Virus record (IMG/VR): IMGVR_UViG_3300023184_000025 | Coordinates: 124,001 to 188,000 of that record | DNA: 64,000 nucleotides | Reading direction: 5' to 3' (one strand) | Shown here: piece by piece, positions 8,576 to 24,318 of the stretch | Position numbering within the stretch: the first letter of the stretch is position 1 | How the letters are laid out: every line of letters starts with the position of its first letter | Program-made: the position numbers and the translations under genes | The notes under the pieces: model-generated | The model's database searches: none | What the model was told of the DNA's origin: nothing | Seen by the model: only the letters and a program-made list of their open reading frames with translations

Positions 8576-9295
8576 TTATTTATACCGGATCCAAAACTTC
8601 TGCACAACCGGATCGGTAATTTCGTGAGGTTTGGGATTTCCGTGAAAAATAGCAATACGTGTTGTGGGATCTAATAATGTGCCTGCACCAGGACGACGAT
8701 ATTTTCTTGTTTTAAAGTCAAGACCTCCGTCCAGTAATTGCCAACGCCAGCTTTTGATTAAATTACTGTCAAAGAACCGTATATCCTTTGGGTTTAATGT
8801 TGCTGACAAATAGTCCTGATCACCTGGATATTTTCTTATTAAGTCTGCCAGATTTTGCTTTAAAAAGTCATCCCAGATATAGCTAAATTTAACTGTGTCC
8901 CAAAGCATTAAACTTGAGTTAATTCCTGCCCAATCTCGCCACAGGTATTTAAAATCTTTAATTGTCCAAAAATACTTGCTACTATCGCTCCATAAACAGT
9001 CTATGTTTTCAAATATAACCGTGTCAAGATCTAAGTACAACATTCTGCCCTGAAAATGTTCTGGGTTAAAAAGTTGTAACTTGTACCACCAACTTTGTCT
9101 AGGTCCAGAAACTCCTGGCCAATCTATTAATTCGTGTTTGATAAAAGGTGGCGGTACACCACGAAAAGCTTCTGTGTAAACATGAAATCGCACGTCCATG
9201 CTGACGTTTCTACAAATCATATGATATAAAGTATCAACATAGGACCAGTTATATTTGTCTCCATGTATCAAACATGCGCAGTCAATTGTGGTCAT
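8576..9295 (-). CDS. GT8-like glycosyltransferase (GT-A fold)
   Basis: MLYLDLDTVIF (DxD), NSSLM, GDQDYL, IFHGNPKP. Confidence 0.85.
   Translation of the reverse strand: MTTIDCACLIHGDKYNWSYVDTLYHMICRNVSMDVRFHVYTEAFRGVPPPFIKHELIDWPGVSGPRQSWWYKLQLFNPEHFQGRMLYLDLDTVIFENIDCLWSDSSKYFWTIKDFKYLWRDWAGINSSLMLWDTVKFSYIWDDFLKQNLADLIRKYPGDQDYLSATLNPKDIRFFDSNLIKSWRWQLLDGGLDFKTRKYRRPGAGTLLDPTTRIAIFHGNPKPHEITDPVVQKFWIRYK
8577..8584 (-). promoter_or_regulatory. T4-type late promoter TATAAATA
   Basis: Exact consensus upstream of the SD and ATG 8555. Confidence 0.75.
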
Positions 9296-10083
9296 AAAGG
9301 TGGGTTATGCCAAAAGTGTGGATATTGTTGTAATACCTGTTGTACCAGTGCAGGATACACAGTTGAGACAACATGGGTAGTACACTTATGATTGATAGCT
9401 GATATTGTGTCTAACTGTTTAAAAGCATGCAATACTTGCTCAGGATCTCTGTGTTGACTTTCTATACAACTAACCACTTTATTTTTTATTAGATCATCAC
9501 TGCCCATCCAGGTCCAGTGCCAGCCAACTGATTCATCTAGACCAACACAATGACTACGGTTTTTTCTTTTAACTACTGCTAGATTGCCTTTGTACAAGTC
9601 ATGCGGTGTTTCAAACATACCACGCCTGGCAACCACACTACCTTTCCATCCACGATCTGCACGTTGGTCAACTCGGTACATATACATATCAAATCCACAA
9701 CTTACTGGCCTATTATGTTGATCCATTTGATTAACAATTTTACTCCACTTGGTTGGATCAATGACCTCGTCGAGATCTCCGTGAATAACAATATCATCTG
9801 AATTGCAACTGCCAAGTGCAGTTTTAAATCCCTGTCTCATTGCCGTTTCGCAAATCAGGTTAGTCTGATCAGCAGTTAGTGGTAATCGAATTACTTGTAT
9901 TCTGTCTGAGTATTTGTCATTGTACTTTTTTAAATTGTCAGTCAAGTAATAGGGCTTTTCAATACCACTAAATGTTCTACTTGCTTCTAAAACTATCCAG
10001 CGATCTACATAGTGGTCGGTAATTGCTAGATGTATGTCTAGCATGTCAAATTCGTTGTTAAACAATAAGGTGTCAATGACCAT
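9292..10083 (-). CDS. GT17-like glycosyltransferase (beta-1,4-GlcNAc transferase family)
   Basis: FNNEFDMLDIHL, VDRWIVLEASRTFSG-x-x-KP, HGDLDEV, GWHWTW. Confidence 0.8.
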   Translation of the reverse strand: MVIDTLLFNNEFDMLDIHLAITDHYVDRWIVLEASRTFSGIEKPYYLTDNLKKYNDKYSDRIQVIRLPLTADQTNLICETAMRQGFKTALGSCNSDDIVIHGDLDEVIDPTKWSKIVNQMDQHNRPVSCGFDMYMYRVDQRADRGWKGSVVARRGMFETPHDLYKGNLAVVKRKNRSHCVGLDESVGWHWTWMGSDDLIKNKVVSCIESQHRDPEQVLHAFKQLDTISAINHKCTTHVVSTVYPALVQQVLQQYPHFWHNPPL

Positions 10084-10084
10084 T

Positions 10085-10723
10085 TTAAAACTTATAAATT
10101 ATTTGATATTCATCGTACACAGGATGTTTACCTTTTGATTCAAGATATTCAACAATTCTACGACCTTTGCCAGTTCTTAGATTTGTGTTTTTGAATCTGC
10201 TGTTGTCATCTATTGCCACAATGCATCCTGATTTTAAGTAAGATTCGATTACTTTAAATTCGTTTAAATGGTGCTCGGCGCTGTCCTTATCATTTTCCCA
10301 CTTGACGTCCCACGAATCTAAGTAAAACAAATCAACCATGGATAAATCAGACTGTTCGCTCAACCAAGTTACGCTGTCACTGCATGTGACTTTGAAATTT
10401 TTTGACAGTATTGCTGTTGATGCTGAGGCACAGGCACCCGGGTCAATATCCACTGACCTCACGGACCCGTTGTGCATATCTACAAATTCAGTGAATAATT
10501 TTGCACTCTGACCGTCTTTCCAGTTGCCCGGATTTCGTAGAGTGCCAGTTTCAATTATGTGGTACTGATCTTGACTACGATTTACTAGTTCAGCAAACAT
10601 AATGTTGAATCCGTGTGCTCGTTGATATAGTCCATCAACTAACCCTCGCTTTATTGCGCTAACACGTGGATTTAATAAATTGTAATAATTTTTTCGGTAA
10701 AACTCTAACCAGTCTTGTTTCAT
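10085..10723 (-). CDS. Class I SAM methyltransferase (Methyltransf_24-like)
   Basis: IIETGT, VRSVDID, CSDSVTWL, DLFYLDS, IVAIDD. Confidence 0.8.
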   Translation of the reverse strand: MKQDWLEFYRKNYYNLLNPRVSAIKRGLVDGLYQRAHGFNIMFAELVNRSQDQYHIIETGTLRNPGNWKDGQSAKLFTEFVDMHNGSVRSVDIDPGACASASTAILSKNFKVTCSDSVTWLSEQSDLSMVDLFYLDSWDVKWENDKDSAEHHLNEFKVIESYLKSGCIVAIDDNSRFKNTNLRTGKGRRIVEYLESKGKHPVYDEYQIIYKF

Positions 10724-10730
10724 TCTTTAT

Positions 10731-11312
10731 TTAAAGTAAATTGTTATCAGCTGTTGGTTTTGTAACCAACCAACAACGGCCTGATCTGTGTACTTTTATA
10801 TTCATTGGTCCAAAAAAATCCCAAACGGCCTGTTGAACTCCTGGGTAACCTTTTGTGTAGTCATCACCGGCAAACATAGAACCTGGGCGCATTTTTGGCC
10901 ACCAGGCAGTGAGATCTTTTGTTACTGCTTCATAGCTGTGGCCAGCATCCACGTAACAAAAGTCTACAGATTGATCTTGAAATTGGTTGGCTGCGTTCCA
11001 ACTCATCATGGTCAACATAGTGATTGAATCTATCACTGGTTCGATATTTTTACGGAAAATATTTTCCATGTTCTGCACTACACCTTGATCGTATGCTATA
11101 TCAGACTCACCTTTCCAACTGTCTACACAATAAAATTCACCTAACTTGTCTTGATTGATTAACTCAACCACGCAATATGCCGCACTACGCCCTGTCCAAG
11201 ATCCTAGCTCAACCCAGGTGCCGTTTTTAGGGAATTGTTCTAACACAAGGTCAAGCATGACTGTGTTTCTAACGCTCATAAATCCGTCTATGCCTTGATA
11301 AAAGTGGTCCAT
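10731..11312 (-). CDS. Class I SAM methyltransferase (Methyltransf_24-like); start revised to ATG 11312
   Basis: WVELGSWTGRSA, YCVDSW, DFCYVDAGHSYEAVTKDL, GDDY; TAAATA 4 nt before ATG 11312. Confidence 0.85.
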   Translation of the reverse strand: MDHFYQGIDGFMSVRNTVMLDLVLEQFPKNGTWVELGSWTGRSAAYCVVELINQDKLGEFYCVDSWKGESDIAYDQGVVQNMENIFRKNIEPVIDSITMLTMMSWNAANQFQDQSVDFCYVDAGHSYEAVTKDLTAWWPKMRPGSMFAGDDYTKGYPGVQQAVWDFFGPMNIKVHRSGRCWLVTKPTADNNLL

Positions 11313-11316
11313 ATTA

Positions 11317-11344
11317 TATTTACCATAATATACGTAGATAAATA
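11317..11344. promoter_or_regulatory. Back-to-back divergent late promoters (TAAATA minus 11322-11317; TAAATA plus 11339-11344)
   Basis: 4 and 5 nt from ATG 11312 and ATG 11350 respectively. Confidence 0.65.
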
Positions 11345-11349
11345 TTTCT

Positions 11350-12105
11350 ATGAAAATCGTACTTGTTACAGGTGGGTTTGATCCCATACACTCCGGGCAC
11401 CTTGCTTACTTTCAGTCGGCAAAACAATTAGGTGACAAACTAATTGTCGGACTTAACTCAGACGCATGGCTTACTCGTAAAAAAGGTAGGCCTTTTATGC
11501 CCATGAGTGAACGTTTTGCACTAATTGGTGCGTTAAGCATTGTAGACGAAGTTGTGGTTTACAACGATGATGATAACTCCAGTTGCAATGCAATTCAGTT
11601 GATCAAACAACGCTACCCCGGTGAACAAATTGTGTTTGCCAATGGTGGCGATCGCACCCGAGACAACATTCCCGAAATGATATTTGACGATGTTGAATTT
11701 GCGTTTGGGGTAGGCGGTGAAAACAAAATGAACTCTAGTTCATGGATCCTTGAGGATTGGAAGAAACCCCGGACCACCCGCGCCTGGGGATACTATCGTG
11801 TGTTACACGAAGTGGGTGCAAACACCAAACTCAAAGAGCTAACTGTTACGCCCAAGACATGTTTGAGCATGCAACGTCATGACCAACGTGCGGAGTTTTG
11901 GTTTGTTGCCGAAGGTGAAGCCGCTGTTTATACACTAGACTCTGGTAGTGATCACGATTTAGTTGGCACATATGGTCTGCATGAATATGTGTTTATTGAC
12001 AAAGGACAATGGCACATGCTATGCAACGAAACAAATCAGCCATTAAAATTAATTGAAATTCAGTACGGTGAGAACTGCATTGAAGAGGATATTGAAAGAA
12101 AATGA
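11350..12105 (+). CDS. HIGH-family nucleotidyltransferase (HldE/TagD-like) fused to a mannose-6-P isomerase type II-like cupin
   Basis: VTGGFDPIHSGH, GLNSD, ANGGDR; C-terminal RAWGYYRVL, LSMQRH..RAEFWFVAEG, EIQYG. Confidence 0.88.
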   Translation: MKIVLVTGGFDPIHSGHLAYFQSAKQLGDKLIVGLNSDAWLTRKKGRPFMPMSERFALIGALSIVDEVVVYNDDDNSSCNAIQLIKQRYPGEQIVFANGGDRTRDNIPEMIFDDVEFAFGVGGENKMNSSSWILEDWKKPRTTRAWGYYRVLHEVGANTKLKELTVTPKTCLSMQRHDQRAEFWFVAEGEAAVYTLDSGSDHDLVGTYGLHEYVFIDKGQWHMLCNETNQPLKLIEIQYGENCIEEDIERK

Positions 12106-12779
12106 TTCCAATTTTTATAGGGTATGACCCTAGAGAAGCAATTGCATTTCATACCTGTTCTAATAGTATTATTAGACATGCAACACAACCAGTGCAGATT
12201 ATTCCATTGGCATTAAACCTATTTAAAGACTACAAAGAAACACACACAGATGGCAGCAATCAATTTATCTATAGTAGATTTCTTGTGCCGCACTTGATGC
12301 AATTCAATGGATGGGCTATTTTTATAGACGGTGATATGGTTGTGCGTGACGACATTACTAAATTGTGGGAATTACAAAACCCCTATAAGGATGTATTGGT
12401 AGTCAAGCATGATTATAAAACAAAAATGTCTGAGAAATACCTTGGTTCAAAGAATGAAGACTATCCTAGAAAAAATTGGAGTAGTGTTATTTTATGGAAC
12501 TGTAATAGCTTTCCTAATCGTAAACTAACACCAGAATTTATACAAAAAGCCACAGGAGCCGAACTGCATCGATTTACCTGGATTGATGATAAACGCCTTG
12601 GTGAACTGCCACCTGAATGGAATTGGTTGCCCGATGAATACGGGCCAAACCCCGCGGCCAAGCTCTTGCACTATACCTTGGGCACTCCATGCTTCCACGA
12701 GTTTGCTGACACACCACAAGGCAACGAGTGGCACAGAGAACGCATACTCACTGAGTATTGTTTACAAAGGACACTATAA
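12102..12779 (+). CDS. GT-A glycosyltransferase (GT8-related)
   Basis: IFIGYDPRE, FIYSRFLVP, FIDGDM, PRKNWSSV, WNWL, LHYTLGTP. Confidence 0.82.
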   Translation: MIPIFIGYDPREAIAFHTCSNSIIRHATQPVQIIPLALNLFKDYKETHTDGSNQFIYSRFLVPHLMQFNGWAIFIDGDMVVRDDITKLWELQNPYKDVLVVKHDYKTKMSEKYLGSKNEDYPRKNWSSVILWNCNSFPNRKLTPEFIQKATGAELHRFTWIDDKRLGELPPEWNWLPDEYGPNPAAKLLHYTLGTPCFHEFADTPQGNEWHRERILTEYCLQRTL

Positions 12780-13588
12780 TGGGTAAGTGGTTATTTCTTA
12801 GCAAGAATGGCAAGGATGAATATATCAATATGTTTGCCGCGGGTTGTGGTGGGGAGATAACCAACTCCGACGACTTTGATTATTATTATGATGTATTAGT
12901 TGATGATAGACCCGTAGTACTGCGTGGAATTTTAAAACATAAAATTATGCGCAGTTGCTGGGAAGATAATAAAACATTCTATTACATGGACAGTGGCTAC
13001 TTTGGTAATCAACCCGGGCACCAGAATCCCCAAGGATGGAAGCTTTGGCACAGAATTGTAAAGAATGATCTTCAACACAACGAAATAGTTCCTAGGCCCG
13101 GTGATAGATGGAAAAAACTTCGAATTGACCTGGGTCCAAGAAGACATGGAAAAACAATAATTGTTGCGGCCCCCGATGAAAAACCTTGCAAGTTTTATGG
13201 AATTGATTTAGAAACCTGGCTCATTGAAACTGTGGAAACTTTAAAAAAATACACAGACCGGCCAATTATTATCAGACAACGTGAGCCAAAAAGAATAGAC
13301 CGTGTACAATTGAATCCATTATCTGCTATTTTGTCAAGAGATGTACATGCATTAGTAACATTTAACAGCGTTGCAGCCACAGAAGCAGTCATGCAGGGAA
13401 TTCCAGCATTTGTGTTGGCTCCATCAAATGCGGCAACGCCGGTTGGCAACACAGATCTGAGTAAGATCGAAACACCTTACTACCCCGATACAGATAAACT
13501 TCATGCCTGGGCTCATCATCTTGCATACGGACAGTTTCATGTGGATGAGTTACGAAATGGTACTGCATATAGGATTTTAACAACATGA
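12779..13588 (+). CDS. KpsS/capsule-synthesis-like GT-B transferase, paralog 1
   Basis: TAATG-coupled start; YYMDSGY, IIIRQR, LVTFNSVAATEAVMQGIPAFV. Confidence 0.65.
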   Translation: MGKWLFLSKNGKDEYINMFAAGCGGEITNSDDFDYYYDVLVDDRPVVLRGILKHKIMRSCWEDNKTFYYMDSGYFGNQPGHQNPQGWKLWHRIVKNDLQHNEIVPRPGDRWKKLRIDLGPRRHGKTIIVAAPDEKPCKFYGIDLETWLIETVETLKKYTDRPIIIRQREPKRIDRVQLNPLSAILSRDVHALVTFNSVAATEAVMQGIPAFVLAPSNAATPVGNTDLSKIETPYYPDTDKLHAWAHHLAYGQFHVDELRNGTAYRILTT

Positions 13589-14547
13589 AGGTTATAAGTT
13601 ATCTCTCAACCTTGCCTAAGAAACAAGAGCCTACACCTGAGTCTTTGCAAAAACAAAATAATAAGGCAAATACACTAAGATATTTTATCGACGGAGTAAT
13701 TAACGCTGGCGATGAAGGACAGGTGATTGAAACTATGCAATACGAACCAGCTGATGTTGCAATGATACTAGGCTGGGTTCACGAAAACGGTAAAACTGGT
13801 GCGCACCTGGCGTTCAGACAAGAAATCATCGATCGTCAAAAAGCCATTGGTGGTAGGACTGTTATTGCAGATAGCAATTTGTTTTTGTATAAAAATACTA
13901 CCAATCCTGGATACTGGTTGCGTTATAGCTACGATGGAGTTTTTCCAACCACTGGCGAATATTGCGATCATGAACCTGATCCAGTTAGATGGGAGATTAT
14001 AAAACAAGCCATTGGTGTTGAACTAAGTCCCTGGCGAAAAAATGGAGACCATATTTTGCTTTGCCTTCAACGAGATGGTGGTTGGAGTATGGCAGGGTGG
14101 AATGTGGTTGATTGGGCACTAAATGTCATAACAACATTAAGAAAGTTTACACAAAGAAGTATTCGTATAAGAGCCCACCCTGGCGATAAACGAGCAAAAA
14201 AATACTGCGATCGTCTACTAAAACTTTGTAGAGGAAGAGCATTGCTTAATGTTCATTTCAGCACCAATGAAAGATTAGAAGATGACCTTGGTCGATGTTG
14301 GGCCATGGTTAATCATAATAGTAGTCCTGCAGTTGCATCTGCATTACAGGGCATTCCGGTATTTGTTACTGATCCGGACCGAAGTCAGTGCAAAGAAATT
14401 GCCAATATCAATCTGGCAAATATAGAAAATCCTATTATATACGACCGAGAGTCGTGGATAAAACGCATAAGTCAATTCCACTGGAGCCATTCAGAACTTA
14501 AATCTGGGCATTGCTGGAGACACATGAAACGATGGGCTAACAAATGA
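13585..14547 (+). CDS. KpsS/capsule-synthesis-like GT-B transferase, paralog 2
   Basis: LLCLQRDG, IRIRAHPGD, VNHNSSPAVASALQGIPVFV. Confidence 0.65.
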   Translation: MKVISYLSTLPKKQEPTPESLQKQNNKANTLRYFIDGVINAGDEGQVIETMQYEPADVAMILGWVHENGKTGAHLAFRQEIIDRQKAIGGRTVIADSNLFLYKNTTNPGYWLRYSYDGVFPTTGEYCDHEPDPVRWEIIKQAIGVELSPWRKNGDHILLCLQRDGGWSMAGWNVVDWALNVITTLRKFTQRSIRIRAHPGDKRAKKYCDRLLKLCRGRALLNVHFSTNERLEDDLGRCWAMVNHNSSPAVASALQGIPVFVTDPDRSQCKEIANINLANIENPIIYDRESWIKRISQFHWSHSELKSGHCWRHMKRWANK

Positions 14548-15272
14548 TAGAAATTATTACTAGTTTTGATCAACGATATTATGATTTAATTGGTAAAGAC
14601 TGTGTTAATTCCTGGTTGAAACATTGGAATCCGTATTATAAACTCACTTGTTATGTTGAGGACTTTTCATTTTCTAATAATTACAGAATTAAACAAATAC
14701 AGTTCGATCAATTAGATCAGGACTATTACGCATTACAAAAAGAAGACTTTCATAGAAGCGTTAAAAGATTTTCAAAGAAGGCATATAGTTTTATCCATGC
14801 TATGAATAATACTGACCAACAGTGGATATTATGGATTGACGCAGATGTGATTACGGAAAGTACCATGCCGTGGGATTTTTGGAATAAAATTCTTAATCCG
14901 TCGCATTTATCTTTGTATTTGGGAGTATCATATACCGAAGATAAACAAGGTAATACAGGCAGTTGGCTAGTGCCCGAAACTGGAGTTTTTGCTGTTAATA
15001 CGCATCATCCAAAATTTAAATTATTTAAATCAGAATACACTCGTAGGTATAAGAAAAGAGACCATAAAGATCTCAGACGATTCTATGACAATGATGTATT
15101 TGGGGCGGCAATCAAATTGTCCAAGGCCGACTGCACTGATCTATGTGCTGACTTTGCTAAACCTTATAAAACACCCATGAGACATACTGTTCTCGGTCCA
15201 TATCTGACTCATCACAAAGCTAAACACAGTAAAGAACACTACAGTCAAACTGAGTTTGACGACGACCAATAA
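14544..15272 (+). CDS. GT-A nucleotide-diphospho-sugar transferase
   Basis: KKAYSFIHA, WILWIDADV (DxD), ETGVF, HHKAK. Confidence 0.75.
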   Translation: MIEIITSFDQRYYDLIGKDCVNSWLKHWNPYYKLTCYVEDFSFSNNYRIKQIQFDQLDQDYYALQKEDFHRSVKRFSKKAYSFIHAMNNTDQQWILWIDADVITESTMPWDFWNKILNPSHLSLYLGVSYTEDKQGNTGSWLVPETGVFAVNTHHPKFKLFKSEYTRRYKKRDHKDLRRFYDNDVFGAAIKLSKADCTDLCADFAKPYKTPMRHTVLGPYLTHHKAKHSKEHYSQTEFDDDQ

Positions 15273-16785: not shown

Positions 16786-17429
16786 AATGGAGTCCATATT
16801 GTATTGCTCTTACTTTTAACTGGTGCGGCTTCATACGGGCCGCATAAATCATTGAGCCATTGCCTGTGTTGATCTTGCTGGCCGTTGTCCTCAATTAACA
16901 ACCAAGGTCTGTTGCGGCGTATAGTGTCACGACTTCCTTCAAGTACTGCATTTTCAAAACCCTCAACATCAATCTTGATCCAGTCCACAGATTGAAAATT
17001 GAATCGATCCAGCGTGGTCAACTCTCCAGTGTGTTGTTCAAACTCTGGGTTGGGCACAAACTCTGCCACTTGTTTGGTATGCCCACACTTGAGAGTTTGT
17101 AATTCAAATATTGCTGTTTGATCTCTATCGCCAAGACCCAAGTTATGCAATTCTACATTGTTATAATTTTCTAGATTTTTTTGCAGGACTTCAAAATTTT
17201 TAAGCACTGGTTCAAAACATACCACATGTTCAAACTGTTCAGCACTTGGTCTGGCAAATATACCAATGTTAGCACCAATATCAATCATTGTACGTTTTTG
17301 TGGAATATTATTATACACATAGTACCGGTAACGTTGTTGGTAATGTACATCTACAACATTTTGTAAACGCTCGCTGAAGAAACCATCAAGTGGTTCAGGA
17401 GAATACCAGAGTGAGTTAATTTTATACAT
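16782..17429 (-). CDS. FkbM family SAM methyltransferase
   Basis: IDIGANIG, VCFEP, LGLGD, DWIKIDVEGFE. Confidence 0.88.
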   Translation of the reverse strand: MYKINSLWYSPEPLDGFFSERLQNVVDVHYQQRYRYYVYNNIPQKRTMIDIGANIGIFARPSAEQFEHVVCFEPVLKNFEVLQKNLENYNNVELHNLGLGDRDQTAIFELQTLKCGHTKQVAEFVPNPEFEQHTGELTTLDRFNFQSVDWIKIDVEGFENAVLEGSRDTIRRNRPWLLIEDNGQQDQHRQWLNDLCGPYEAAPVKSKSNTIWTPL

Positions 17430-17442: not shown

Positions 17443-17447
17443 ACAAA

Positions 17448-18275: not shown

Positions 18276-19226
18276 ATCTGCATTAACCATATCTTCAATC
18301 ATTTGTTTAAATGTTGTTTTTGGTTTCCAGTCCAATAGACTTCGAGCCCTGGTGCTGTCCCCGCATAGACTATATAATTCAGCAGGTCTTTTAAATCGTG
18401 GATCAGTTAGTACTTTGGATTCCCAGTTGGGAATATTAACATAATTAAACGCAACATCTAAAAGTTCTCGAATAGTATGTTGTTCGCCAGTGGCAATAAC
18501 ATAATCTTTGGCTTCATCTTGCTGTAACATTAGCCACATTGCTTCAACAAAGTCCCCGGCAAATCCCCAATCTCGGCGGCTGTCGATATTACCCAATGTA
18601 ATTGTTTCCTGCAATCCTAATTTAATACGTGCAACAGCATCTGTAACTTTGCGTGTAACAAATTCTTTTCCACGCAATGGACTTTCGTGATTGAATAACA
18701 CTCCTGAGCAAGCATAGAGACTATAACTTTCTCGAAAGTTCACAGTCATCCAGTGACTATACAGTTTACTAACCCCATACGGACTACGAGGAGTAAATGG
18801 GGTAGTTTCATTTTGTGTAGGTGTTGTGGCATTGCCAAACATTTCGCTGGTGCTTGCTTGATAAAAACGACTATTGGGACTATGTGTTTTAATTGCATTA
18901 AGAATATTAAGTGGACCCAATGAGTTGACTTCTGTAGTTAACTTATTCAAGTCCCAGCTAATTCCAACAAAGCTCTGAGCCGCAAGGTTATATATCTCTA
19001 CTGGTTTTAAACTTCTAAGTAGATGATTTATTGAATTTTCATCAGTGATATCACCTGTTACTAGTTCAATATCATTTTCAATTCCAAGCCATTTGATATT
19101 GTCAAGGTTTGGATTGCTATATCTTTTAACTAGTCCGTATACTTGATAATCTTTTTCAAGCAATAACTTTGCTAGGTACGGGCCATCTTGACCAGTCATT
19201 CCAGTGACAAAAGCAGTTTTTTTCAT
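18249..19226 (-). CDS. gmd: GDP-mannose 4,6-dehydratase
   Basis: TGMTGQDG, YNLAAQSFV, YQASTSEMFG, SPYGVSK, FNHESPLRG, FVTRK, RDWG. Confidence 0.95.
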   Translation of the reverse strand: MKKTAFVTGMTGQDGPYLAKLLLEKDYQVYGLVKRYSNPNLDNIKWLGIENDIELVTGDITDENSINHLLRSLKPVEIYNLAAQSFVGISWDLNKLTTEVNSLGPLNILNAIKTHSPNSRFYQASTSEMFGNATTPTQNETTPFTPRSPYGVSKLYSHWMTVNFRESYSLYACSGVLFNHESPLRGKEFVTRKVTDAVARIKLGLQETITLGNIDSRRDWGFAGDFVEAMWLMLQQDEAKDYVIATGEQHTIRELLDVAFNYVNIPNWESKVLTDPRFKRPAELYSLCGDSTRARSLLDWKPKTTFKQMIEDMVNADLQRYQPRQ

Positions 19227-19235
19227 TGTTTCCTC

Positions 19236-20000
19236 TTATTCTTTACCTAACCAGGTTAACGATTTATCAATCCAAGGTAGTGTTAGATCTCGTTGTTTTA
19301 CATGTCCATATTTGTTTATACTATCAACAGCAGTCACTGGCAATAACTTTGCCTCGGCTAATTCATACCAGGTAGTAGTTTTTGGATTTTTTGGAGATTG
19401 ATCGCTGTTATAAACAACCGCATGTAACCAAGGACTATCTGGCTGTTTTAAAAAATAGCCATCTCTGCAATCAAATCCTGAAACTGCCAGGGTATGTATT
19501 AAACTGACCATTGTCCAATTATAGTATTGGAAATCTAATTGATCAAACGCCTGTGCATTAAATTCCATATTGGTAGTCTGTGGTAACACTATGGCTAATG
19601 TGGCATTTGGGTGCATGGCCTTTTTCCAGTTGGCCAGTGTTTGAAACGGATTTATAACATACTGAAATGAGTCATGTGACCAAACTACATCAAACAATGT
19701 TTTGTGTATTGCAATTGGATCTTCAAAGTCTTGCCGTTGATATTGTGTATTGTGATATTTTTTAGTCATTGGGAACTGTTCAAATTGATCAATTCCGTAA
19801 CATTTAATATTTAAAGGGTCGGCACGTTCATCTCTGGTGGTTCTGGTAGCCCACCATTCAATGTCTAATCCACGTCCGCAACCCATGTCAACTACTGTGG
19901 CAATACTTTCCATAAAGTCATCATACGCATAAAACTGATTTAATGTTTGCAAACTATGTTGATGACTCTCTTCAGGGGAAATAAAATAAGTTTTGTTCAT
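19236..20000 (-). CDS. Class I SAM methyltransferase
   Basis: VVDMGCGRG, CYGID, FDVVWSHDSFQY. Confidence 0.8.
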   Translation of the reverse strand: MNKTYFISPEESHQHSLQTLNQFYAYDDFMESIATVVDMGCGRGLDIEWWATRTTRDERADPLNIKCYGIDQFEQFPMTKKYHNTQYQRQDFEDPIAIHKTLFDVVWSHDSFQYVINPFQTLANWKKAMHPNATLAIVLPQTTNMEFNAQAFDQLDFQYYNWTMVSLIHTLAVSGFDCRDGYFLKQPDSPWLHAVVYNSDQSPKNPKTTTWYELAEAKLLPVTAVDSINKYGHVKQRDLTLPWIDKSLTWLGKE

Positions 20001-20449
20001 ACTTGAATGTCTTCCATGCCGGACGTTCGTAATCTAACAATATGACCCATTTGCCATTGTTTAGTATCAAGTCCTTTCATAATACCCAGCCATTTATTAC
20101 GCAATAGAGCCACTTCGTTGATAATAGTTTCAAAATCAATAACCTCATCCTCGCCATCGACGTATTTTTCAGCATCTCGTGATGTTAATGCACGGGCATA
20201 TCCTTCTAGGTATTTTTGGAAATGGCGGCGGCGGATTTTGCGTAATTGTATATTGAGAAGATTGAGTACTGCTTCTATTTCTTGAAGCTGATTAAAACGA
20301 TGTTCAGTAATACCCGGCAATTCTTTGATATTTTTTTCAACTAGTCCGCCTATTGCACATTCTCGCTTGGCTAACCCTAGCTCTCGTTCATAATGTGCAA
20401 TAAAATCCGGAATGGCCGAAAGGCTTGCTACTACCTTGCTATAGTACAT
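19997..20449 (-). CDS. uvsY: UvsY-like recombination mediator
   Basis: Helical protein with RALTSRDAEKYVDGEDEV and KGLDTKQWQ, near uvsX. Confidence 0.8.
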   Translation of the reverse strand: MYYSKVVASLSAIPDFIAHYERELGLAKRECAIGGLVEKNIKELPGITEHRFNQLQEIEAVLNLLNIQLRKIRRRHFQKYLEGYARALTSRDAEKYVDGEDEVIDFETIINEVALLRNKWLGIMKGLDTKQWQMGHIVRLRTSGMEDIQV

Positions 20450-20451
20450 AG

Positions 20452-20709
20452 TTAATAATCTTCACCGTCCCAGTCCTCTTCTTCTTCATACTCTTCGTCT
20501 TCATCCTGTTCTTCAGAATCGTCTTGAATATAGTTGACTAGTGCTTTTTTAATATCGCTGTCTGATTTAAATGTTGTCCGGATGTCTTCTGGAGAATAAT
20601 CGTGATCGATTAGCATACTGATAAAACTATCCGCCGCTTCACTGCGATCAATTGTACCAATATAACGTTTTAATTCGCTCCAAATTTCTGCTACTAAATC
20701 TAAATGCAT
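20452..20709 (-). CDS. Small acidic-tailed hypothetical protein between uvsX and uvsY
   Basis: Tightly packed ORF with D/E-rich C-terminus. Confidence 0.75.
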   Translation of the reverse strand: MHLDLVAEIWSELKRYIGTIDRSEAADSFISMLIDHDYSPEDIRTTFKSDSDIKKALVNYIQDDSEEQDEDEEYEEEEDWDGEDY

Positions 20710-20714
20710 TTGTA

Positions 20715-21773
20715 TTATTCTCCCTGATCAGATTCTTCAGTACTTACCGTTTCTGTTTGATTGACAAAGTCTTTCATCACAATATCCAGGCAATCGTCGT
20801 CGTTGCGTTCCCAACCCTTACGGAACTTTTTAATAATTTCTCCAGCACTGGTAGTGAATACTAGGCTGTTGCCTTCTTTCTTGAGTAGGCCTTTCTTCTC
20901 AATCAAATCAGTGAGACCCGAATACGGACTCATTCCAGATTCGTAAGGAATTTTAACCTGCACACCTTCGAAAGGTTTAGCATAGCGTGTTTTCATTACC
21001 TTGCATGCGGCACGAATACCCATGACGTCGGTAATTTTGTTGCCATCTTCATCTTCTTTAAGTTTGAGTTTCTTCATTGCAACAACAATTGAGCTTGCAT
21101 AAACAAAACCTTGTCCACCGCTGATCTTGTCATCTGGATCAAACATGTCTTGACTGGCATATGTGTGATTGGTACATACCAAGCCTACATTGTAACTTCC
21201 AAACATGTTGACACAATTACGAACAAGTGATGTAAGTGCTTTGGGTTTACGTCCCATGTCACCTTTCATATCGCCAGCATCAAACTGATTTACATCAGTT
21301 GGTGTAAGCAACATGCCCAATGAATCAATGACAAATAACACTTTGGGACGTTCGCCATCTGGTAATGATTTGTAATCACTCATGAATGTGGAAATAGTTT
21401 TTGCCACATCATCAATCATGGCCATTGCTAGTTTGAGTAGTTTGCTTTCGCTAGTGTCAACACCAAGATCATGCAACCATTTTTCATCTAGTGCATTTTC
21501 AGAGTCAATCAGCACTACAAAGATACCTTGTTCTTGTGCGTTCTTGATAATGTTGCCGGAACAGATGTAGCTTTTGCCAGCGCCAGACTCTCCGGCAAAC
21601 ACCGTAACCTTGCCCAATGGCACACCTCGGTTAAAGTCTCCGCTGATCAAATAGTTCAGTGCATAGTTGCCTGTGCTGATCCAATCTGTGGGATCGTTAA
21701 AGCCAATGCTTAGGCCTTCGATGCTTTTTGTAATTTCCTTACGGAACTTGCTTACGTCAAACGGTTTTCCCAT
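20715..21773 (-). CDS. uvsX: UvsX/RecA-like recombinase
   Basis: ISTGNYALN, Walker A GESGAGKS, IDSENA, FVIDSLG, TNH, SGG. Confidence 0.93.
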   Translation of the reverse strand: MGKPFDVSKFRKEITKSIEGLSIGFNDPTDWISTGNYALNYLISGDFNRGVPLGKVTVFAGESGAGKSYICSGNIIKNAQEQGIFVVLIDSENALDEKWLHDLGVDTSESKLLKLAMAMIDDVAKTISTFMSDYKSLPDGERPKVLFVIDSLGMLLTPTDVNQFDAGDMKGDMGRKPKALTSLVRNCVNMFGSYNVGLVCTNHTYASQDMFDPDDKISGGQGFVYASSIVVAMKKLKLKEDEDGNKITDVMGIRAACKVMKTRYAKPFEGVQVKIPYESGMSPYSGLTDLIEKKGLLKKEGNSLVFTTSAGEIIKKFRKGWERNDDDCLDIVMKDFVNQTETVSTEESDQGE

Positions 21774-21800
21774 AAATGTTTTCCTAAAAATGTAAAGTTA

Positions 21801-21829
21801 ATTATACTAAAAATTAAGTCAAATGTCAA
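21801..21829 (-). promoter_or_regulatory. Consensus sigma70 promoter TTGACA-N17-TATAAT for uvsX
   Basis: -35 at 21829-21824, -10 at 21806-21801; AGGA SD downstream. Confidence 0.85.
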
Positions 21830-22649
21830 TGTGTAATTGTATGTATTTTTGCCAAAACGCAGAAACTATGTCAGAGTTAAAATCATCGTAGCCCATTTTT
21901 AAATACAATTCTTTCATTGCATTAACATAGTTTTCTTTGACAAAAATATTATTATCAATGTCAAATGATAAAATTTTATTTGTATGCAGTGGATAATATT
22001 CTGTTATTTCTTCTCGAATGTTATCGGGCAAATTTGAAAATTTTTTTATATCAAATCCTGAATATTCAAAATCTTTCCAACTTGGCCAATTTTCAGTGGC
22101 AAGAATCAAATATTTTTCTTTTGATTCATTGTATCCATACCCTAACGTACGATCTCCGGTGGTTTGTTTTAATGCTGATCCAATACTCCAAAATTTTTCA
22201 AAATTTACTAAATTGATAATTCTAGCATTTGGCCAGGCTGTTAATACTTTTGTTCTAGGGTTCAGCTGATAAGGATGGAATGTCAAAAATAAATCAAGTC
22301 CGCTGTTCAATTGTTCCCATATAAAATCACCAGTGATTGACCGTTGCCCTCTAATAATCCAATCTTCTATATCTTGTCTACAAAATAAATCACTATTTTT
22401 CCATTCGTAACCATCCTGGGGATAGCTAGGCACCCACTTTGTCATTTCACTCTTGTTTGGAGGCAATGTTGTGAGTACTGCATTTAATCTGTACTCGTAG
22501 TCATTGGGATATTTTAATAAATGTTTATTAAATTTAGGATTCTTAACCAGCGTGTGTCGGCTCAGCGTTAAAGAATTGCAAATAAAATTCCCGCCGGTGA
22601 ATGCAGGATATCTTAAAATTACAAAATTATGTGGTTCAAAGTCAGTCAT
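21819..22649 (-). CDS. Hypothetical protein with sulfotransferase/P-loop-like N-terminal motif
   Basis: ILRYPAFTGGNFICNSL; AT-rich; ATGA-coupled. Confidence 0.65.
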   Translation of the reverse strand: MTDFEPHNFVILRYPAFTGGNFICNSLTLSRHTLVKNPKFNKHLLKYPNDYEYRLNAVLTTLPPNKSEMTKWVPSYPQDGYEWKNSDLFCRQDIEDWIIRGQRSITGDFIWEQLNSGLDLFLTFHPYQLNPRTKVLTAWPNARIINLVNFEKFWSIGSALKQTTGDRTLGYGYNESKEKYLILATENWPSWKDFEYSGFDIKKFSNLPDNIREEITEYYPLHTNKILSFDIDNNIFVKENYVNAMKELYLKMGYDDFNSDIVSAFWQKYIQLHIDI

Positions 22650-23596
22650 TGAGATACTTTTAAATAATTTTTACTAAAGTAATGATTGTAATTATACTCA
22701 ATGGTATCTTGCTCTAATAGATATAAATCTTGCCAATCATCTGTTGATAGTAAACTAAATTTTGATATCATTGATACTAATTCTAGTAATCTAATAACTG
22801 GATTTTGAATTGTGTCGAATCGATAATCAAACAATTTAGTGTATTTTTTGAATCCATAGTATTTTTCCACATAGTCATGCCAACCGGGTTGTGCATATGC
22901 TAGGAACAATCCTCTGGTTACTACGCTGTATAAAAATTTTTCTGTTACAAATGGATAATAACTTGTGGCCAACGTTTCGCTTACTATGTGTAAAAAACTC
23001 TGTGTTAACTTATTTTCAAGATTATATATGTTGTCTGCATGTGCAAATCTAACATGTCCAAAGCTGTGTATAGTTTCTTGAAAATTATTACTGTTTACAA
23101 AAAATTTACCACTAACACGAGCTTGACCAGGAGTTAGATAATCTAATAGATGTCCATCGACATTATTAGATGTAAATTGAAAATTCTTACTGCAATATTC
23201 AGGAACAAAAAATTTAAACTTATCTAGTATTGAAACTAGTAGTGTTCTACCAACTTGCAACGATCCATTAAAACTACAAACAAAATTTTTATAATCCAGT
23301 TCTGGATGCATATTGTAATTATAAAAATGACCAGTGTTGATTCTTTCCTGCTCTTGTATCAAAAATGTAATTTTAAGATTTGGATATTTTGCTGTTATGT
23401 TGTTGGTGAAAATCTGATGAACTGTGATGTCAAAAATCTTATTCCGTTGAATAGCAAAATCATTTAATCTTTTTAGGATTTTATTTTGCAAATCAATATC
23501 AAATCCGCCTATGTGGTCGTTGAATAGAAATTTATCAGGTACCCAACTTGGGTCTTCTAATATCTTATCATAAACAACAGGGGGCAATGATATCAT
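22646..23596 (-). CDS. Putative glycosyltransferase, GT-B/GT10-like C-terminal region
   Basis: FLHIVSET...FVTEKF...GFK segment recalls the YVTEK motif of GT10-type enzymes; assignment tentative. Confidence 0.5.
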   Translation of the reverse strand: MISLPPVVYDKILEDPSWVPDKFLFNDHIGGFDIDLQNKILKRLNDFAIQRNKIFDITVHQIFTNNITAKYPNLKITFLIQEQERINTGHFYNYNMHPELDYKNFVCSFNGSLQVGRTLLVSILDKFKFFVPEYCSKNFQFTSNNVDGHLLDYLTPGQARVSGKFFVNSNNFQETIHSFGHVRFAHADNIYNLENKLTQSFLHIVSETLATSYYPFVTEKFLYSVVTRGLFLAYAQPGWHDYVEKYYGFKKYTKLFDYRFDTIQNPVIRLLELVSMISKFSLLSTDDWQDLYLLEQDTIEYNYNHYFSKNYLKVSQ

Positions 23597-24318
23597 ATAT
23601 TTTTGTATTCATCAAAGGTACTTACATAATGTTCAACATTATTTTTTAACAACATAGCCGATTTATATGGAGGATAGTACATTGCTTTGATAAATTGTTT
23701 AATTTGATTGTCAGACCAGCCATCCTGTATAATTCCGTTGAATGGTTTTTCTTTGTTAAAATAACGTCCAAGTTTTTTTGGAGGCGTTCCCAAATCTCCT
23801 GTTAACACATGTTTGATTGATTCAATTGCATGGTTTAGTATTTTAAAATTTAAACTAAATGCTGTGTCTTGTTCGTCAATTAAAAACTTCTGTTGAAGTA
23901 TAATATTGCCAGCATCAAATTGACTGTTAACATAGTGCCAGGTATAGCCGGTAAATTTTTCATTGTTGATTAATGCCCAACTTGACATCCATCGTCCTCG
24001 ATATTCTTCAAGCAACCCTGTATGTAAATTTATAATACCGTTTGGAAATTTTTTAATATTATCTTCAGATATTAAAAAAGGAATACCACTGATATTTAAC
24101 ATCAACTCTGCAGATTGTGTAACATACTTATTAAAGTCGTTGTTATTGGAAATTGATGTGTGCTGTATTAACAATTGGTCACAAAATTTTGTTAACAGCA
24201 ACTGATTAGGAGGATGATAGACCTGAATTTCTCCAGGTCTATACCCAAGCTCAAATAATTTACTAACTAAGGGGATACACGATGTATCAGTACAACCAAT
24301 TGATAGATTGCCCCTCAT
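23593..24318 (-). CDS. N10-formyl-THF-dependent formyltransferase (probably sugar N-formyltransferase)
   Basis: IINLHTGLLEEYRG, WAL, TGYTWH, DAGNII. Confidence 0.85.
   Translation of the reverse strand: MRGNLSIGCTDTSCIPLVSKLFELGYRPGEIQVYHPPNQLLLTKFCDQLLIQHTSISNNNDFNKYVTQSAELMLNISGIPFLISEDNIKKFPNGIINLHTGLLEEYRGRWMSSWALINNEKFTGYTWHYVNSQFDAGNIILQQKFLIDEQDTAFSLNFKILNHAIESIKHVLTGDLGTPPKKLGRYFNKEKPFNGIIQDGWSDNQIKQFIKAMYYPPYKSAMLLKNNVEHYVSTFDEYKNI

What the first reader, a model, noticed from the sequence alone, without database searches (positions are those of the whole stretch)
8576..24318. About 16-kb late-expressed glycan synthesis and decoration cluster, candidate virion glycosylation system
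Seen: about nine glycosyltransferase-like genes, Gmd, five SAM methyltransferases, a nucleotidyltransferase-cupin fusion and a formyltransferase. Several operon heads carry late TAAATA promoters (10728-10733, 11317-11322, 11339-11344, 17437-17442). Known: T4 DNA glucosyltransferases act during replication, and virion glycosylation is established for some mycobacteriophages and giant viruses. Inference: late timing and methylated/formylated sugar chemistry fit a complex glycan placed on the virion (fibres, sheath, capsid) or host surface better than DNA modification.
Basis: partly seen in the sequence, partly recalled or inferred. Interest (0 to 1): 0.75.

Follow-up and report, generated by a model that had tools for sequence, protein, structure and literature searches.

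The report
Hypervariable glycan-making island in jumbo phage
An uncultured freshwater jumbo phage carries 18 soluble sugar-building and sugar-decorating genes on both sides of its recombination genes; about two thirds sit behind late-gene promoter motifs, so they probably coat the virus particle or another phage product with an unusual methylated and formylated glycan, though the target cannot be decided from sequence.

Summary
Window 8576-24318 holds 18 glycan-related genes:
- Gmd;
- a formyltransferase closest to Brucella WbkC (GDP-perosamine N-formyltransferase);
- a cytidylyltransferase-like/cupin fusion;
- nine glycosyltransferase-like genes (three family-level, six weaker);
- four or five methyltransferases;

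The stretch is not one cluster. UvsX, an 85-aa ORF and UvsY lie inside it. SSB, UvsX and UvsY are adjacent in cultured relatives, so the sugar genes are insertions on both sides of UvsX-UvsY.

All four TAAATA sites exist. TAAATA is the most enriched hexamer before gene starts genome-wide (14.6x). It precedes sheath, tube, adaptor and portal genes and none of 12 replication genes, and a gp55-like sigma gene is present. Only 12 of the 18 genes lie behind such motifs. Gmd and one methyltransferase follow UvsX/UvsY behind a perfect sigma-70 promoter; the formyltransferase, U5 and U4 follow SSB.

About 35 related uncultured aquatic phage contigs keep the same sites with shuffled, diverged content. 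No cluster protein has a membrane segment, and the genome has no thymidylate-synthase-type base hydroxymethylase. Virion or phage-product glycosylation is the best reading (about 0.4). Host-surface remodelling remains open, and DNA glycosylation is unlikely. This is a new variant of the glycan gene suites known from large cyanophages.

The parts
8576..9295 (-). Glycosyltransferase-like gene (239 aa); last gene of late unit F.
   Evidence: phrog_1962 'glycosyltransferase', 68 bits. DxD at residue 89 and no TM segment.
9292..10083 (-). GT17-like (GT-A) glycosyltransferase (263 aa).
   Evidence: PF04724, 59.7 bits, above the cut-off; weak PF00535 hit.
10085..10723 (-). Probable class I SAM methyltransferase (212 aa).
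   Evidence: PF13578, 24.7 bits, just under the 26.3 cut-off. TAAATA at 10733-10728 lies 4 nt before the ATG and overlaps the upstream stop codon.
10731..11312 (-). SAM methyltransferase (Methyltransf_24); head of late unit F. The likely true start is 11312, not 11387.
   Evidence: PF13578, 73 bits. TAAATA at 11322-11317 lies 4 nt before the ATG at 11312.
11313..11349 (.). 37-bp divergent control region with two back-to-back TAAATA motifs (11322-11317 on the minus strand, 11339-11344 on the plus strand).
   Evidence: TAAATA-N5-ATG is conserved before the NT-cupin homologues in L018 and L011.
11350..12105 (+). Fusion of a cytidylyltransferase-like nucleotidyltransferase with a type II mannose-6-P-isomerase cupin; head of late unit E. 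Probably sugar activation.
   Evidence: PF01467 (55.9 bits), PF01050 (70.3 bits), TIGR02199 RfaE domain II (77 bits). Solved relatives of the N-terminal domain are ECT and TagD. The N-terminal domain is 51% identical to proteins of cyanophages S-SSM7 and P-TIM68.
12102..12779 (+). GT8-family glycosyltransferase (225 aa).
   Evidence: PF01501, 31.6 bits; phrog_28018. 41-86% identical in clade relatives.
12758..14547 (+). U1a (12758-13588) and U1b (13585-14547): paralogous phage-restricted putative glycosyltransferases.
   Evidence: Paralogy. DUF6716 'putative GT' hits in 4 of 20 homologues. Atlas neighbours carry Capsule_synth and are fused to GT8.
14544..15272 (+). U2a: GT-A-like putative glycosyltransferase; last gene of unit E.
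   Evidence: Paralogue of 15245-16072. Invariant WxDxD. Atlas neighbours are GT8/Nucleotid_trans. One homologue hits GT2 and one hits GT34.
15245..16072 (-). U2b: GT-A-like putative glycosyltransferase; last gene of late unit D.
   Evidence: Homologues in distant relatives carry TAAATA-N5-ATG.
16069..16797 (-). U3: probable SAM-dependent methyltransferase of a family unknown to Pfam.
   Evidence: 104 environmental homologues, none with a Pfam domain. Conserved SQHGEDGII and EIGxGxG motifs. The profile gives only weak hits to solved SAM methyltransferases, E 0.11. hhalign against the FkbM gene was negative.
16782..17429 (-). FkbM-family methyltransferase; head of late unit D.
   Evidence: PF05050 (60 bits), TIGR01444 (89 bits), weak RfbT hit. 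TAAATA at 17442-17437 lies 7 nt before the ATG.
17448..18275 (+). U1c: third U1 paralogue; a single-gene unit with no TAAATA of its own.
   Evidence: In relatives, TAAATA lies 29-38 nt upstream of the homologue.
18249..19226 (-). GDP-mannose 4,6-dehydratase (Gmd); last gene of the UvsX unit.
   Evidence: PF16363 (404 bits); TIGR01472 (408 bits, cut-off 415). Terminator-like hairpin at 18171-18153.
19236..20000 (-). Class I SAM methyltransferase (Methyltransf_11); its start overlaps the UvsY stop by 4 nt.
   Evidence: The overlap with UvsY is kept in L027 and L032.
19997..21773 (-). Not glycan genes: UvsY (19997-20449), a conserved 85-aa ORF (20452-20709) and the UvsX/RecA recombinase (20715-21773).
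   Evidence: phrog_231 for UvsY. PF00154 and 68% identity to Vibrio phage 2.275.O for UvsX.
21801..21829 (-). Perfect sigma-70 promoter (TTGACA-17-TATAAT) 28 nt upstream of UvsX.
   Evidence: The TAGTATAAT -10 element is conserved in nearly all clade relatives.
21819..22649 (-). U4: sulfotransferase-fold protein (tentative).
   Evidence: Model pLDDT 79. Foldseek top hits are almost all PAPS sulfotransferases, probability 0.99, E 2e-3. VIA Z about 8, which is only middling. The window copy has Asn where the family consensus has Lys in the AGGKF loop.
22646..23596 (-). U5: GT-B-fold glycosyltransferase of a phage-restricted family; the hallmark gene of the clade.
   Evidence: Model pLDDT 84. All top structural hits are GT-B enzymes; the best VIA match is T4 beta-glucosyltransferase at Z 9.7, followed by TarM, Gtf3 and GT10 fucosyltransferases. 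Present in all ~35 related loci. One hit in 185,579 species genomes. 109 representative clusters at E<=1e-30.
23593..24318 (-). WbkC-like sugar N-formyltransferase.
   Evidence: PF00551. Best solved relative is Brucella GDP-perosamine N-formyltransferase 5VYS, 111 bits, against 58 bits for ArnA.
24331..25320 (-). Flank: gp32-type SSB. The formyltransferase starts 12 nt after its stop.
   Evidence: phrog_1192, 223 bits.
7983..8555 (-). Flank: 190-aa protein of unknown family with a full TATAAATA (8584-8577), a Shine-Dalgarno site and a strong terminator (7953-7931). Probably an abundant late protein.

Best explanation
The region is a glycan-biosynthesis and decoration island of an uncultured freshwater Rak2/CBB-like jumbo myovirus (345 kb). 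It is inserted on both sides of UvsX-UvsY in the replication/recombination module.

Shown by homology or by the sequence itself:
- Gmd would make GDP-4-keto-6-deoxymannose.
- The formyltransferase is closest to the GDP-perosamine N-formyltransferase WbkC.
- A nucleotidyltransferase-cupin fusion probably activates a sugar phosphate.
- There are about nine soluble glycosyltransferase-like proteins, four or five SAM methyltransferases and one sulfotransferase-fold protein.
- None of these proteins has a membrane segment or signal peptide, and there is no flippase, polymerase, transporter or initiating lipid-carrier transferase.

Inferred:
- The products are assembled in the cytoplasm into a methylated, N-formylated (and possibly sulfated) 6-deoxyhexose-containing oligosaccharide.
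- Expression is two-phase. Gmd, one methyltransferase, the formyltransferase, U5 and U4 ride on the SSB and UvsX/UvsY units, which look early or middle. Twelve transferase and methyltransferase genes come on with the structural genes from T4-like TAAATA late promoters, several of them as leaderless mRNAs.
- The most likely acceptor is therefore something that exists only late and in the cytoplasm, namely virion proteins (sheath, fibres, capsid or decoration proteins).
- The shuffled gene content at fixed sites across the clade suggests diversifying selection on an exposed glycan.
For: - Gene identities.
- Fold models: U5 is GT-B and U4 is sulfotransferase-like.
- No hydrophobic segment in any cluster protein.
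- TAAATA is the most enriched upstream hexamer, 14.6x. It precedes the sheath, tube, adaptor, portal and virion-protein genes and none of 12 replication/recombination genes.
- A homologue of the CBB gp55-like late sigma is present (E 4e-50). The same ATAAATA motif is reported before structural genes of CBB and GAP32 (PMC5259590).
- TAAATA-N5-ATG is conserved before NT-cupin and U2 homologues in relatives that are only 32-77% identical in the protein.
- A perfect sigma-70 promoter precedes UvsX, and its -10 element is conserved across the clade.
- About 35 related contigs keep the layout SSB-[U5...]-UvsX-UvsY-[variable island]. UvsX is 77-93% identical, whereas the sugar genes are 25-86% identical and reshuffled. 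Other acyl-, radical-SAM and nucleotidyl-transferases fill the same slots.
- The U1, U2 and U5 families are almost exclusively viral.
- No thymidylate-synthase-type hydroxymethylase is encoded.
- Identical island contigs occur in four runs from three studies, 2018-2025.
Against: - No experimental datum exists. The phage is uncultured and no RNA run holds it.
- The acceptor is not identified. Peripheral, TM-less transferases are also normal in O-antigen pathways.
- The island sits in the replication module, not next to structural genes.
- Six genes, including the committed step Gmd, lack late motifs.
- The 4-aminotransferase needed for perosamine is not in the window. The two DegT enzymes elsewhere in the genome look like C-3 aminotransferases.
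- The glycosyltransferase assignments for U1 and U2 and the sulfotransferase assignment for U4 are weak (Z about 8; sub-threshold Pfam hits).
- The best structural match of U5 is a DNA glucosyltransferase.
Confidence: 0.42

Rival explanations
1. Host-envelope remodelling. The enzymes act at the inner face of the membrane on the host's own undecaprenyl-linked O-antigen, capsule or LPS-core intermediates. The infected cell's surface glycan changes as a result, giving superinfection exclusion, less loss of progeny on debris, or altered grazer recognition. This is the usual reading of the 'LPS/cell-wall' gene suites of large cyanophages.
For: - Gmd, the WbkC-like formyltransferase, the RfbT-like FkbM methyltransferase and GT8 are classic O-antigen/LPS enzymes.
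- The closest phage analogues are the cyanophage suites, which are interpreted this way (PMC9602691, PMC12801897).
- The mosaic, hypervariable content resembles O-antigen loci.
- Many bacterial O-antigen transferases are also TM-less.
Against: - The island has no initiating transferase, flippase, polymerase, ABC transporter, ligase or Gtr-type membrane protein.
- Most transferases are behind late promoters, which leaves little time to replace the existing surface glycan in a lytic cycle.
- U1, U2 and U5 are phage-restricted families rather than recent host acquisitions.
Confidence: 0.25
2. DNA hypermodification. U5, and perhaps other transferases, glycosylate a modified base in phage DNA, as T4 alpha- and beta-glucosyltransferases or the arabinosyl-5hoC and 5hmC-glycan systems do. 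This would protect the genome from host nucleases.
For: - U5 lies between SSB and UvsX in every clade member.
- Its best VIA match is T4 beta-glucosyltransferase (Z 9.7), and T4 AGT also scores (Z 8.2).
- Multi-sugar DNA glycans, and late post-replicative DNA glycosylation, are now documented (10.1101/2023.12.21.572611; PMC13326640).
Against: - The 99%-complete genome has no PF00303 thymidylate-synthase homologue, which is the entry point of all characterised 5hmC, 5hmU and 5hoC routes (PMC13326640).
- No Tet/JBP hit was found, but the control for that search was silent, so it is only weak evidence.
- The Z scores are middling, and other GT-B enzymes (TarM, Gtf3, GT10 fucosyltransferases, MurG) score almost the same.
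- GDP-6-deoxyhexose, N-formyl and multiple O-methyl chemistry has no DNA precedent that I know of (own knowledge).
- The DNA assembles readily from many Illumina metagenomes.
Confidence: 0.07
3. The sugars are made for a soluble or secreted glycoconjugate or a natural-product-like small molecule, in concert with the second locus. They would not be for a virion, envelope or DNA target.
For: - Elsewhere the genome has a desosamine-like set: two DegT aminotransferases, a DesII-like radical SAM enzyme (341 bits) and an SDR.
- It also has a tryptophan-halogenase-like enzyme and a KedN5-like B12 radical-SAM C-methyltransferase. These families are typical of antibiotic sugar tailoring.
Against: - No aglycone-forming (PKS, NRPS or RiPP) genes were seen in the parts examined.
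- The second locus also carries two U5-like transferases, so it is more simply a second glycan island.
- Late co-expression with structural genes is not explained.
Confidence: 0.08

Closest known systems
'LPS / cell-wall synthesis and modification' gene suites of large T4-like cyanophages (P-SSM2, S-SSM7, S-SCSM1, S-SCSM2R)
   Same: - Large aquatic myoviruses carrying Gmd, nucleotide-sugar enzymes, a TagD/RfaE-like cytidylyltransferase, a mannose-6-P isomerase and up to 13 glycosyltransferases. Their function is unproven (PMC9602691, PMC12801897).
- The nucleotidyltransferase domain here is 51% identical to those of S-SSM7 and P-TIM68.
   Different: - A different virus lineage (Rak2/CBB/Atu_ph07-like jumbo phage; UvsX 68% identical to Vibrio phage 2.275.O).
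- The island is fixed on both sides of UvsX-UvsY.
- The hallmark families U1, U2 and U5 are absent or only remotely present in isolate phages.
- It has WbkC-like formyltransferase, sulfotransferase-fold and FkbM genes.
- No GDP-fucose synthase was seen in the island.
Mycobacteriophage virion glycosylation (Freeman et al. 2023, Cell Host Microbe; cited in PMC12619734)
   Same: Phage-encoded soluble glycosyltransferases that decorate capsid and tail-tube subunits in the cytoplasm. This is the mechanism proposed here.
   Different: - Those systems have few genes, located beside structural genes, in siphoviruses of Actinobacteria, with glycans demonstrated by mass spectrometry.
- Here there are 18 genes in a replication module, with no demonstrated glycoprotein.
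- No sequence relationship was tested; the paper is not held in the library.
Giant-virus encoded glycosylation machineries (chlorovirus capsid glycans, Mimivirus fibril glycans); comparison from own knowledge
   Same: Virus-encoded nucleotide-sugar pathways, including GDP-mannose 4,6-dehydratase and amino-6-deoxyhexoses, together with soluble transferases and methyltransferases. They build methylated glycans on virion proteins late in infection.
   Different: Eukaryotic viruses. No homology beyond shared enzyme superfamilies was tested here.
Brucella / Yersinia O:9 N-formylperosamine O-antigen pathway (Gmd-Per-WbkC)
   Same: Gmd plus a formyltransferase whose closest solved relative, by a wide margin, is WbkC (111 bits against 58 bits).
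   Different: - No perosamine synthase is found in the window, and the genome's DegT enzymes look like C-3 aminotransferases.
- There is no ABC transporter and there are no WbkA/E-type polymerising transferases.
T4 DNA alpha/beta-glucosyltransferases and newer DNA-glycan systems
   Same: A small GT-B enzyme (U5) in a replication-gene neighbourhood, with T4 BGT as the best structural match.
   Different: - No hydroxymethylase or hydroxylase is present to create an acceptor base.
- There is no sequence similarity.
- GT10, TarM and MurG-type enzymes score nearly as well.

Membership tests
T4-type late-promoter regulon | TATAAATA-like -10 element upstream of late (structural) genes and absent from replication genes. 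| tested here: met
   TAAATA is 14.6x enriched upstream of starts. It precedes the sheath, tube, adaptor, portal and virion-protein genes and 0 of 12 replication genes.
T4-type late-promoter regulon | A gp55-like late sigma factor is encoded. | tested here: met
   Homologue of CBB_244 at G000:215572-216522, 41% identity, E 4e-50.
T4-type late-promoter regulon | Transcripts start about 6 nt downstream of the motif, late in infection. | not testable with these tools
   No RNA run holds the phage.
GDP-N-formylperosamine pathway (Gmd-Per-WbkC) | GDP-mannose 4,6-dehydratase. | tested here: met
   PF16363, 404 bits; TIGR01472, 408 bits (cut-off 415).
GDP-N-formylperosamine pathway (Gmd-Per-WbkC) | GDP-perosamine synthase (C-4 aminotransferase). 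| tested here: inconclusive
   None in the window. Two DegT enzymes at G000:269-273 kb score 270 and 145 bits to DesV/QdtB-type C-3 aminotransferases, against 138 bits to perosamine synthase.
GDP-N-formylperosamine pathway (Gmd-Per-WbkC) | WbkC-type N-formyltransferase. | tested here: met
   5VYS, E 5e-31, 111 bits; the next family scores 58 bits. Activity was not tested.
Wzx/Wzy- or ABC-dependent O-antigen/capsule locus; Gtr seroconversion | Initiating polyprenyl-P transferase, flippase or ABC transporter, polymerase, or GtrA/B/C membrane proteins. | tested here: not met
   No such Pfam family and no hydrophobic 19-mer above KD 1.33 in any of the 21 ORFs of the interval.
DNA sugar hypermodification system | Enzyme creating the acceptor base (thymidylate-synthase homologue making 5hmC, 5hmU or 5hoC, or MT plus TET/5mYOX). 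| tested here: not met
   PF00303: no match in the 99%-complete genome, while the controls rang in 10 of 14 genomes. PF12851: no match, but the control was silent.
DNA sugar hypermodification system | A DNA-directed glycosyltransferase. | tested here: inconclusive
   The best VIA match of U5 is T4 BGT, Z 9.7, but other GT-B enzymes score 8.8-9.1.
Virion protein glycosylation system | Glycan covalently attached to capsid or tail proteins. | not testable with these tools
   Only indirect support: late promoters, soluble enzymes, and S/T-rich surface segments in the sheath and tail proteins.
Virion protein glycosylation system | Transferase genes co-regulated with structural genes. | tested here: inconclusive
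   12 of 18 genes lie behind TAAATA motifs. The island is in the replication module, and six genes are on SSB or UvsX units.

The most novel reading that the evidence does not exclude
A whole clade of abundant, uncultured aquatic jumbo phages builds its own O-antigen-like coat on the virion. The coat would contain N-formyl-perosamine-type, O-methylated and possibly sulfated sugars. It would be made by phage-restricted glycosyltransferase families from a hypervariable island, plus a second amino-sugar island. It would be expressed in two phases, partly from leaderless late mRNAs, and would diversify under selection in the way bacterial surface antigens do.
Probability: 0.3. Interest if true: 0.8.

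Novelty: new variant of a known kind. Interest (0 to 1): 0.5.

Why it matters
Large aquatic phages commonly carry sizeable sugar-gene suites, and the target of these suites has never been established. Here the suite is unusually complete: precursor enzymes, about nine transferases, five or six tailoring enzymes, and a second locus. It sits at fixed sites in a conserved module across about 35 related contigs, and it has a readable promoter architecture. That makes the competing targets (virion, host surface, DNA) directly testable by heterologous expression and by virome glycoproteomics. If the virion is the target, virion glycosylation would extend from mycobacteriophages and giant viruses to phages that are probably of Gram-negative hosts, with consequences for adsorption, defence evasion and particle fate in lakes. 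The U1, U2 and U5 families would also be new, phage-specific glycosyltransferase families.

Tried and rejected
- **DNA search for near relatives among isolate phages:** no match. U5 has no protein match in isolate phages either.
- **Expression data:** Reads were laid on DNA contigs. It showed the island unchanged in four runs but gave no 5' ends.
- **U3 as an FkbM relative:** hhalign was negative. The methyltransferase call rests only on motifs and an E 0.11 hit to solved structures.
- **Profile searches of U1 and U5 against solved structures:** nothing. Two multi-domain distant U5 relatives also gave nothing.
- **The 190-aa late protein next to the island as an identifiable structural or acceptor protein:** no Pfam or PHROG family, and only close relatives exist.
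- **The moraphage lineage (PMC12619734):** considered and rejected as the same clade. It is predicted to infect Bacteroidota and reaches at most 307 kb.
- **Rfam and repeat scans of 7000-26000:** no RNA family was found, and the only repeats reflect the paralogues.
- **Full T4 octamer TATAAATA:** only three copies in the window, no more than chance. The functional core here is the hexamer.
- **Sheath comparison with isolate phages:** this gave only about 87% coverage, which did not help decide the target.

Full report
**What the window is.** The window is bases 124001-188000 of a single 345,154-bp virus contig with 40% GC and a CheckV completeness estimate of 99%. Its UvsX is 61-68% identical to those of Vibrio phage 2.275.O, Pectobacterium phage CBB, Cronobacter phage GAP32 and Agrobacterium phage Atu_ph07. 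It is therefore a Rak2/CBB-like jumbo myovirus. The DNA is found only in lake and freshwater metagenomes. Identical contigs of the island occur in four runs from three studies dated 2018-2025. The phage is uncultured and its host is unknown.

**Gene content.** Between 8576 and 24318 there are 21 ORFs. Eighteen are sugar-related.
- Family-level support: GT17-like (9292-10083), GT8 (12102-12779), a phrog_1962 glycosyltransferase (8576-9295), Methyltransf_24 (10731-11312), an FkbM methyltransferase (16782-17429), Methyltransf_11 (19236-20000), Gmd (18249-19226, 404 bits), a formyltransferase (23593-24318), and a fusion of a cytidylyltransferase-like domain with a ManC-type cupin (11350-12105).
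- Sub-threshold support: a Methyltransf_24-like gene at 10085-10723 (24.7 bits, just under the 26.3 cut-off).
- The formyltransferase's closest solved relative, by a wide margin, is Brucella WbkC, the GDP-perosamine N-formyltransferase (111 bits; the next family scores 58 bits).
- The remaining ORFs had no Pfam hit. They fall into paralogous families: U1 (12758, 13585, 17448) and U2 (14544, 15245).
- U1 homologues hit DUF6716 ('putative glycosyltransferase') in 4 of 20 cases. Their Atlas neighbours carry Capsule_synth or are fused to GT8.
- U2 has an invariant WxDxD motif, and its neighbours are of the GT8/Nucleotid_trans type.
- U5 (22646-23596) gives a confident model (pLDDT 84) with a GT-B fold.
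- U4 (21819-22649) gives a sulfotransferase-like model, but the scores are only middling.
- U3 (16069-16797) belongs to a family of more than 100 environmental proteins that carry a SAM-binding EIGxGxG motif.

UvsX, a conserved 85-aa ORF and UvsY lie inside the interval. The gp32-type SSB abuts it. In Vibrio phage 2.275.O and in CBB, SSB, RecA/UvsX and UvsY are adjacent. The sugar genes are therefore insertions: three between SSB and UvsX, and fifteen after UvsY.

**Promoters.**
- All four TAAATA sites exist.
- Genome-wide, TAAATA is the most enriched hexamer in the 40 nt before starts: 73 observed, 5 expected.
- It occurs in two position classes. In one it lies 15-28 nt upstream with a Shine-Dalgarno site in between. 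In the other it lies 4-7 nt upstream with no room for one.
- It precedes the sheath, tube, head-tail adaptor, portal and several virion or tail proteins. It precedes none of 12 replication/recombination genes.
- A homologue of the CBB gp55-like late sigma is encoded.
- The CBB paper reports ATAAATA before the structural genes of CBB and GAP32 (PMC5259590).
- TAAATA-N5-ATG is conserved before NT-cupin and U2 homologues in relatives whose flanking sequence has diverged.

I therefore accept TAAATA as a late-promoter motif. It heads three units:
- 11312 to 8576 on the minus strand (four genes);
- 11350 to 15272 on the plus strand (five genes);
- 17429 to 15245 on the minus strand (three genes).

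The site at 10728-10733 is internal to the first unit and overlaps a stop codon.

The other six sugar genes differ. MT11 and Gmd follow UvsY with a 4-nt overlap. This unit is headed by a perfect TTGACA-17-TATAAT promoter 28 nt before UvsX, and its -10 element is conserved across the clade. Such sigma-70 sites number 58 at 11/12 or better, 53 of them on the coding strand, and they cluster in small-gene regions that look early. The formyltransferase, U5 and U4 follow SSB with a 12-nt gap and then 4-nt overlaps. U1c has no motif of its own. 'Late-expressed' is thus true for about two thirds of the genes. The committed precursor step looks early or middle.

**Relatives.** A search with U5 found 38 IMG/VR loci.
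- In about 35 of them the order SSB-[U5, with or without U4 or other genes]-UvsX-85 aa-UvsY-[sugar genes] is kept.
- UvsX is 77-93% identical, whereas the sugar genes are 25-86% identical, present or absent, and rearranged.
- Gmd and the formyltransferase occur only in some relatives. NT-cupin, GT8, U1, U2, U5 and MT11 form a core.
- In relatives, the variable slots hold a hexapeptide acyltransferase, an Asp/Asn-hydroxylase-like protein, an AMP-binding ligase, radical-SAM enzymes and a nucleotidyltransferase-kinase fusion.
- U5 has 109 representative clusters at E<=1e-30. It has one hit among 185,579 species genomes, on a 2-kb contig of a MAG.
- The Atlas neighbours of U1, U2 and U5 are 94-100% viral.
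- The formyltransferase/U5/U4 block has 29.5-32% GC, against 42-46% in its neighbours.

**Rest of the genome.**
- There is no thymidylate-synthase homologue and no Tet/JBP hit, although the control for the latter search was silent.
- A second sugar locus at 264-275 kb has two U5-like paralogues, two DegT aminotransferases nearest DesV/QdtB, a DesII-like radical-SAM enzyme, an SDR, a halogenase-like enzyme and a Na+/H+ exchanger-like protein.
- A KedN5-like B12 radical-SAM methyltransferase lies near 321 kb.

**Interpretation.** No protein of the island has a membrane segment or signal peptide. None of the machinery that exports or polymerises lipid-linked glycans is present.
- *DNA glycosylation.* Known DNA-sugar systems need a thymidylate-synthase-type or TET-type enzyme to create the acceptor base (PMC13326640; 10.1101/2023.12.21.572611), and none is found. 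The location of U5 and its top structural match to T4 beta-glucosyltransferase (Z 9.7) keep this option alive only weakly. Late timing does not argue against it, because DNA glycosylation is itself late (PMC13326640).
- *Host-surface remodelling.* This is the conventional reading for the analogous cyanophage suites (PMC9602691, PMC12801897) and cannot be excluded.
- *Virion glycosylation.* Late co-expression with structural genes, the wholly soluble enzyme set, the phage-restricted transferase families and the precedent of mycobacteriophages and giant viruses make this the best single explanation. I put it at about 0.4.

**Verdict.** The island is a new variant of a known but functionally unresolved kind of phage gene suite. 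Interest is moderate (0.5).

Noticed in passing
Genome-wide; in the window e.g. 11339-11352, 17429-17442, 27925-27936, 30361-30370, 35799-35808, 41941-41954: About 34 genes have TAAATA only 4-7 nt before the ATG, with no Shine-Dalgarno site. They include the portal homologue, a virion protein and several sugar genes. With T4-like geometry this predicts leaderless late mRNAs. The TAAATA-N5-ATG arrangement is conserved in distant relatives.
   Followed up: partly
G000:C1:263222-275071 (outside the window; locus L041): A second glycan locus. It has two U5-like GT-B paralogues, two DegT aminotransferases closest to DesV/QdtB, a DesII-like radical-SAM deaminase (341 bits), an SDR dehydratase/epimerase, a tryptophan-halogenase-like enzyme and a Na+/H+ exchanger-like membrane protein. 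Together these look like a desosamine-like 3-amino-trideoxy-sugar route.
   Followed up: partly
G000:C1:320439-322908 (locus L042 8439-10908): A KedN5-family B12-binding radical-SAM C-methyltransferase lies next to a short (234 aa) DegT-like fragment.
   Followed up: no
Window 21801-21829, 7749-7777, 7841-7869, 48875-49216; genome 44-72 kb, 96-100 kb, 280-326 kb: Arrays of near-perfect sigma-70 promoters (TTGACC/A-N17-TATAAT). There are 58 at 11/12 or better, 53 of them on the coding strand, mostly before small genes. These are presumably the early regulon.
   Followed up: partly
Window 7983-8555 (-): A 190-aa protein of unknown family directly after the island. It has a full TATAAATA, a Shine-Dalgarno site and a strong terminator, and occurs only in close relatives. 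It may be an abundant late protein and a possible glycan acceptor.
   Followed up: partly
Window 21819-24318: The formyltransferase/U5/U4 block has 29.5-32% GC, against 45.6% for SSB and 41.8% for UvsX, so it is compositionally foreign even though U5 is clade-wide. The window's U4 has Asn where the family consensus has Lys in the AGGKF loop.
   Followed up: no
Window 38472-41852 (sheath, residues 434-463); G000:C1:117013-117978: The tail sheath has the most Ser/Thr-rich 30-mer of the proteome (57%). A 321-aa protein upstream of the window carries an (A/P)T-rich repeat of the kind that is often O-glycosylated.
   Followed up: no
Window 11750-11949 and 12550-12749: In lake metagenome contigs the depth spikes 5-50-fold on short conserved stretches of the cupin and GT8 genes. 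This indicates that many co-occurring relatives share these core genes.
   Followed up: no
Window 15245-15272 and 18249-18275: Two pairs of convergent genes overlap by 27-28 nt at their 3' ends (U2a/U2b and U1c/Gmd). No terminator lies between the first pair.
   Followed up: no
Window 25380-25436: Upstream of SSB, in order: a TAAATA (25436-25431), then a weak sigma-70-like site, then a hairpin followed by a T-run that probably terminates the 820-aa virion-protein gene. The promoter of SSB itself was not identified.
   Followed up: no
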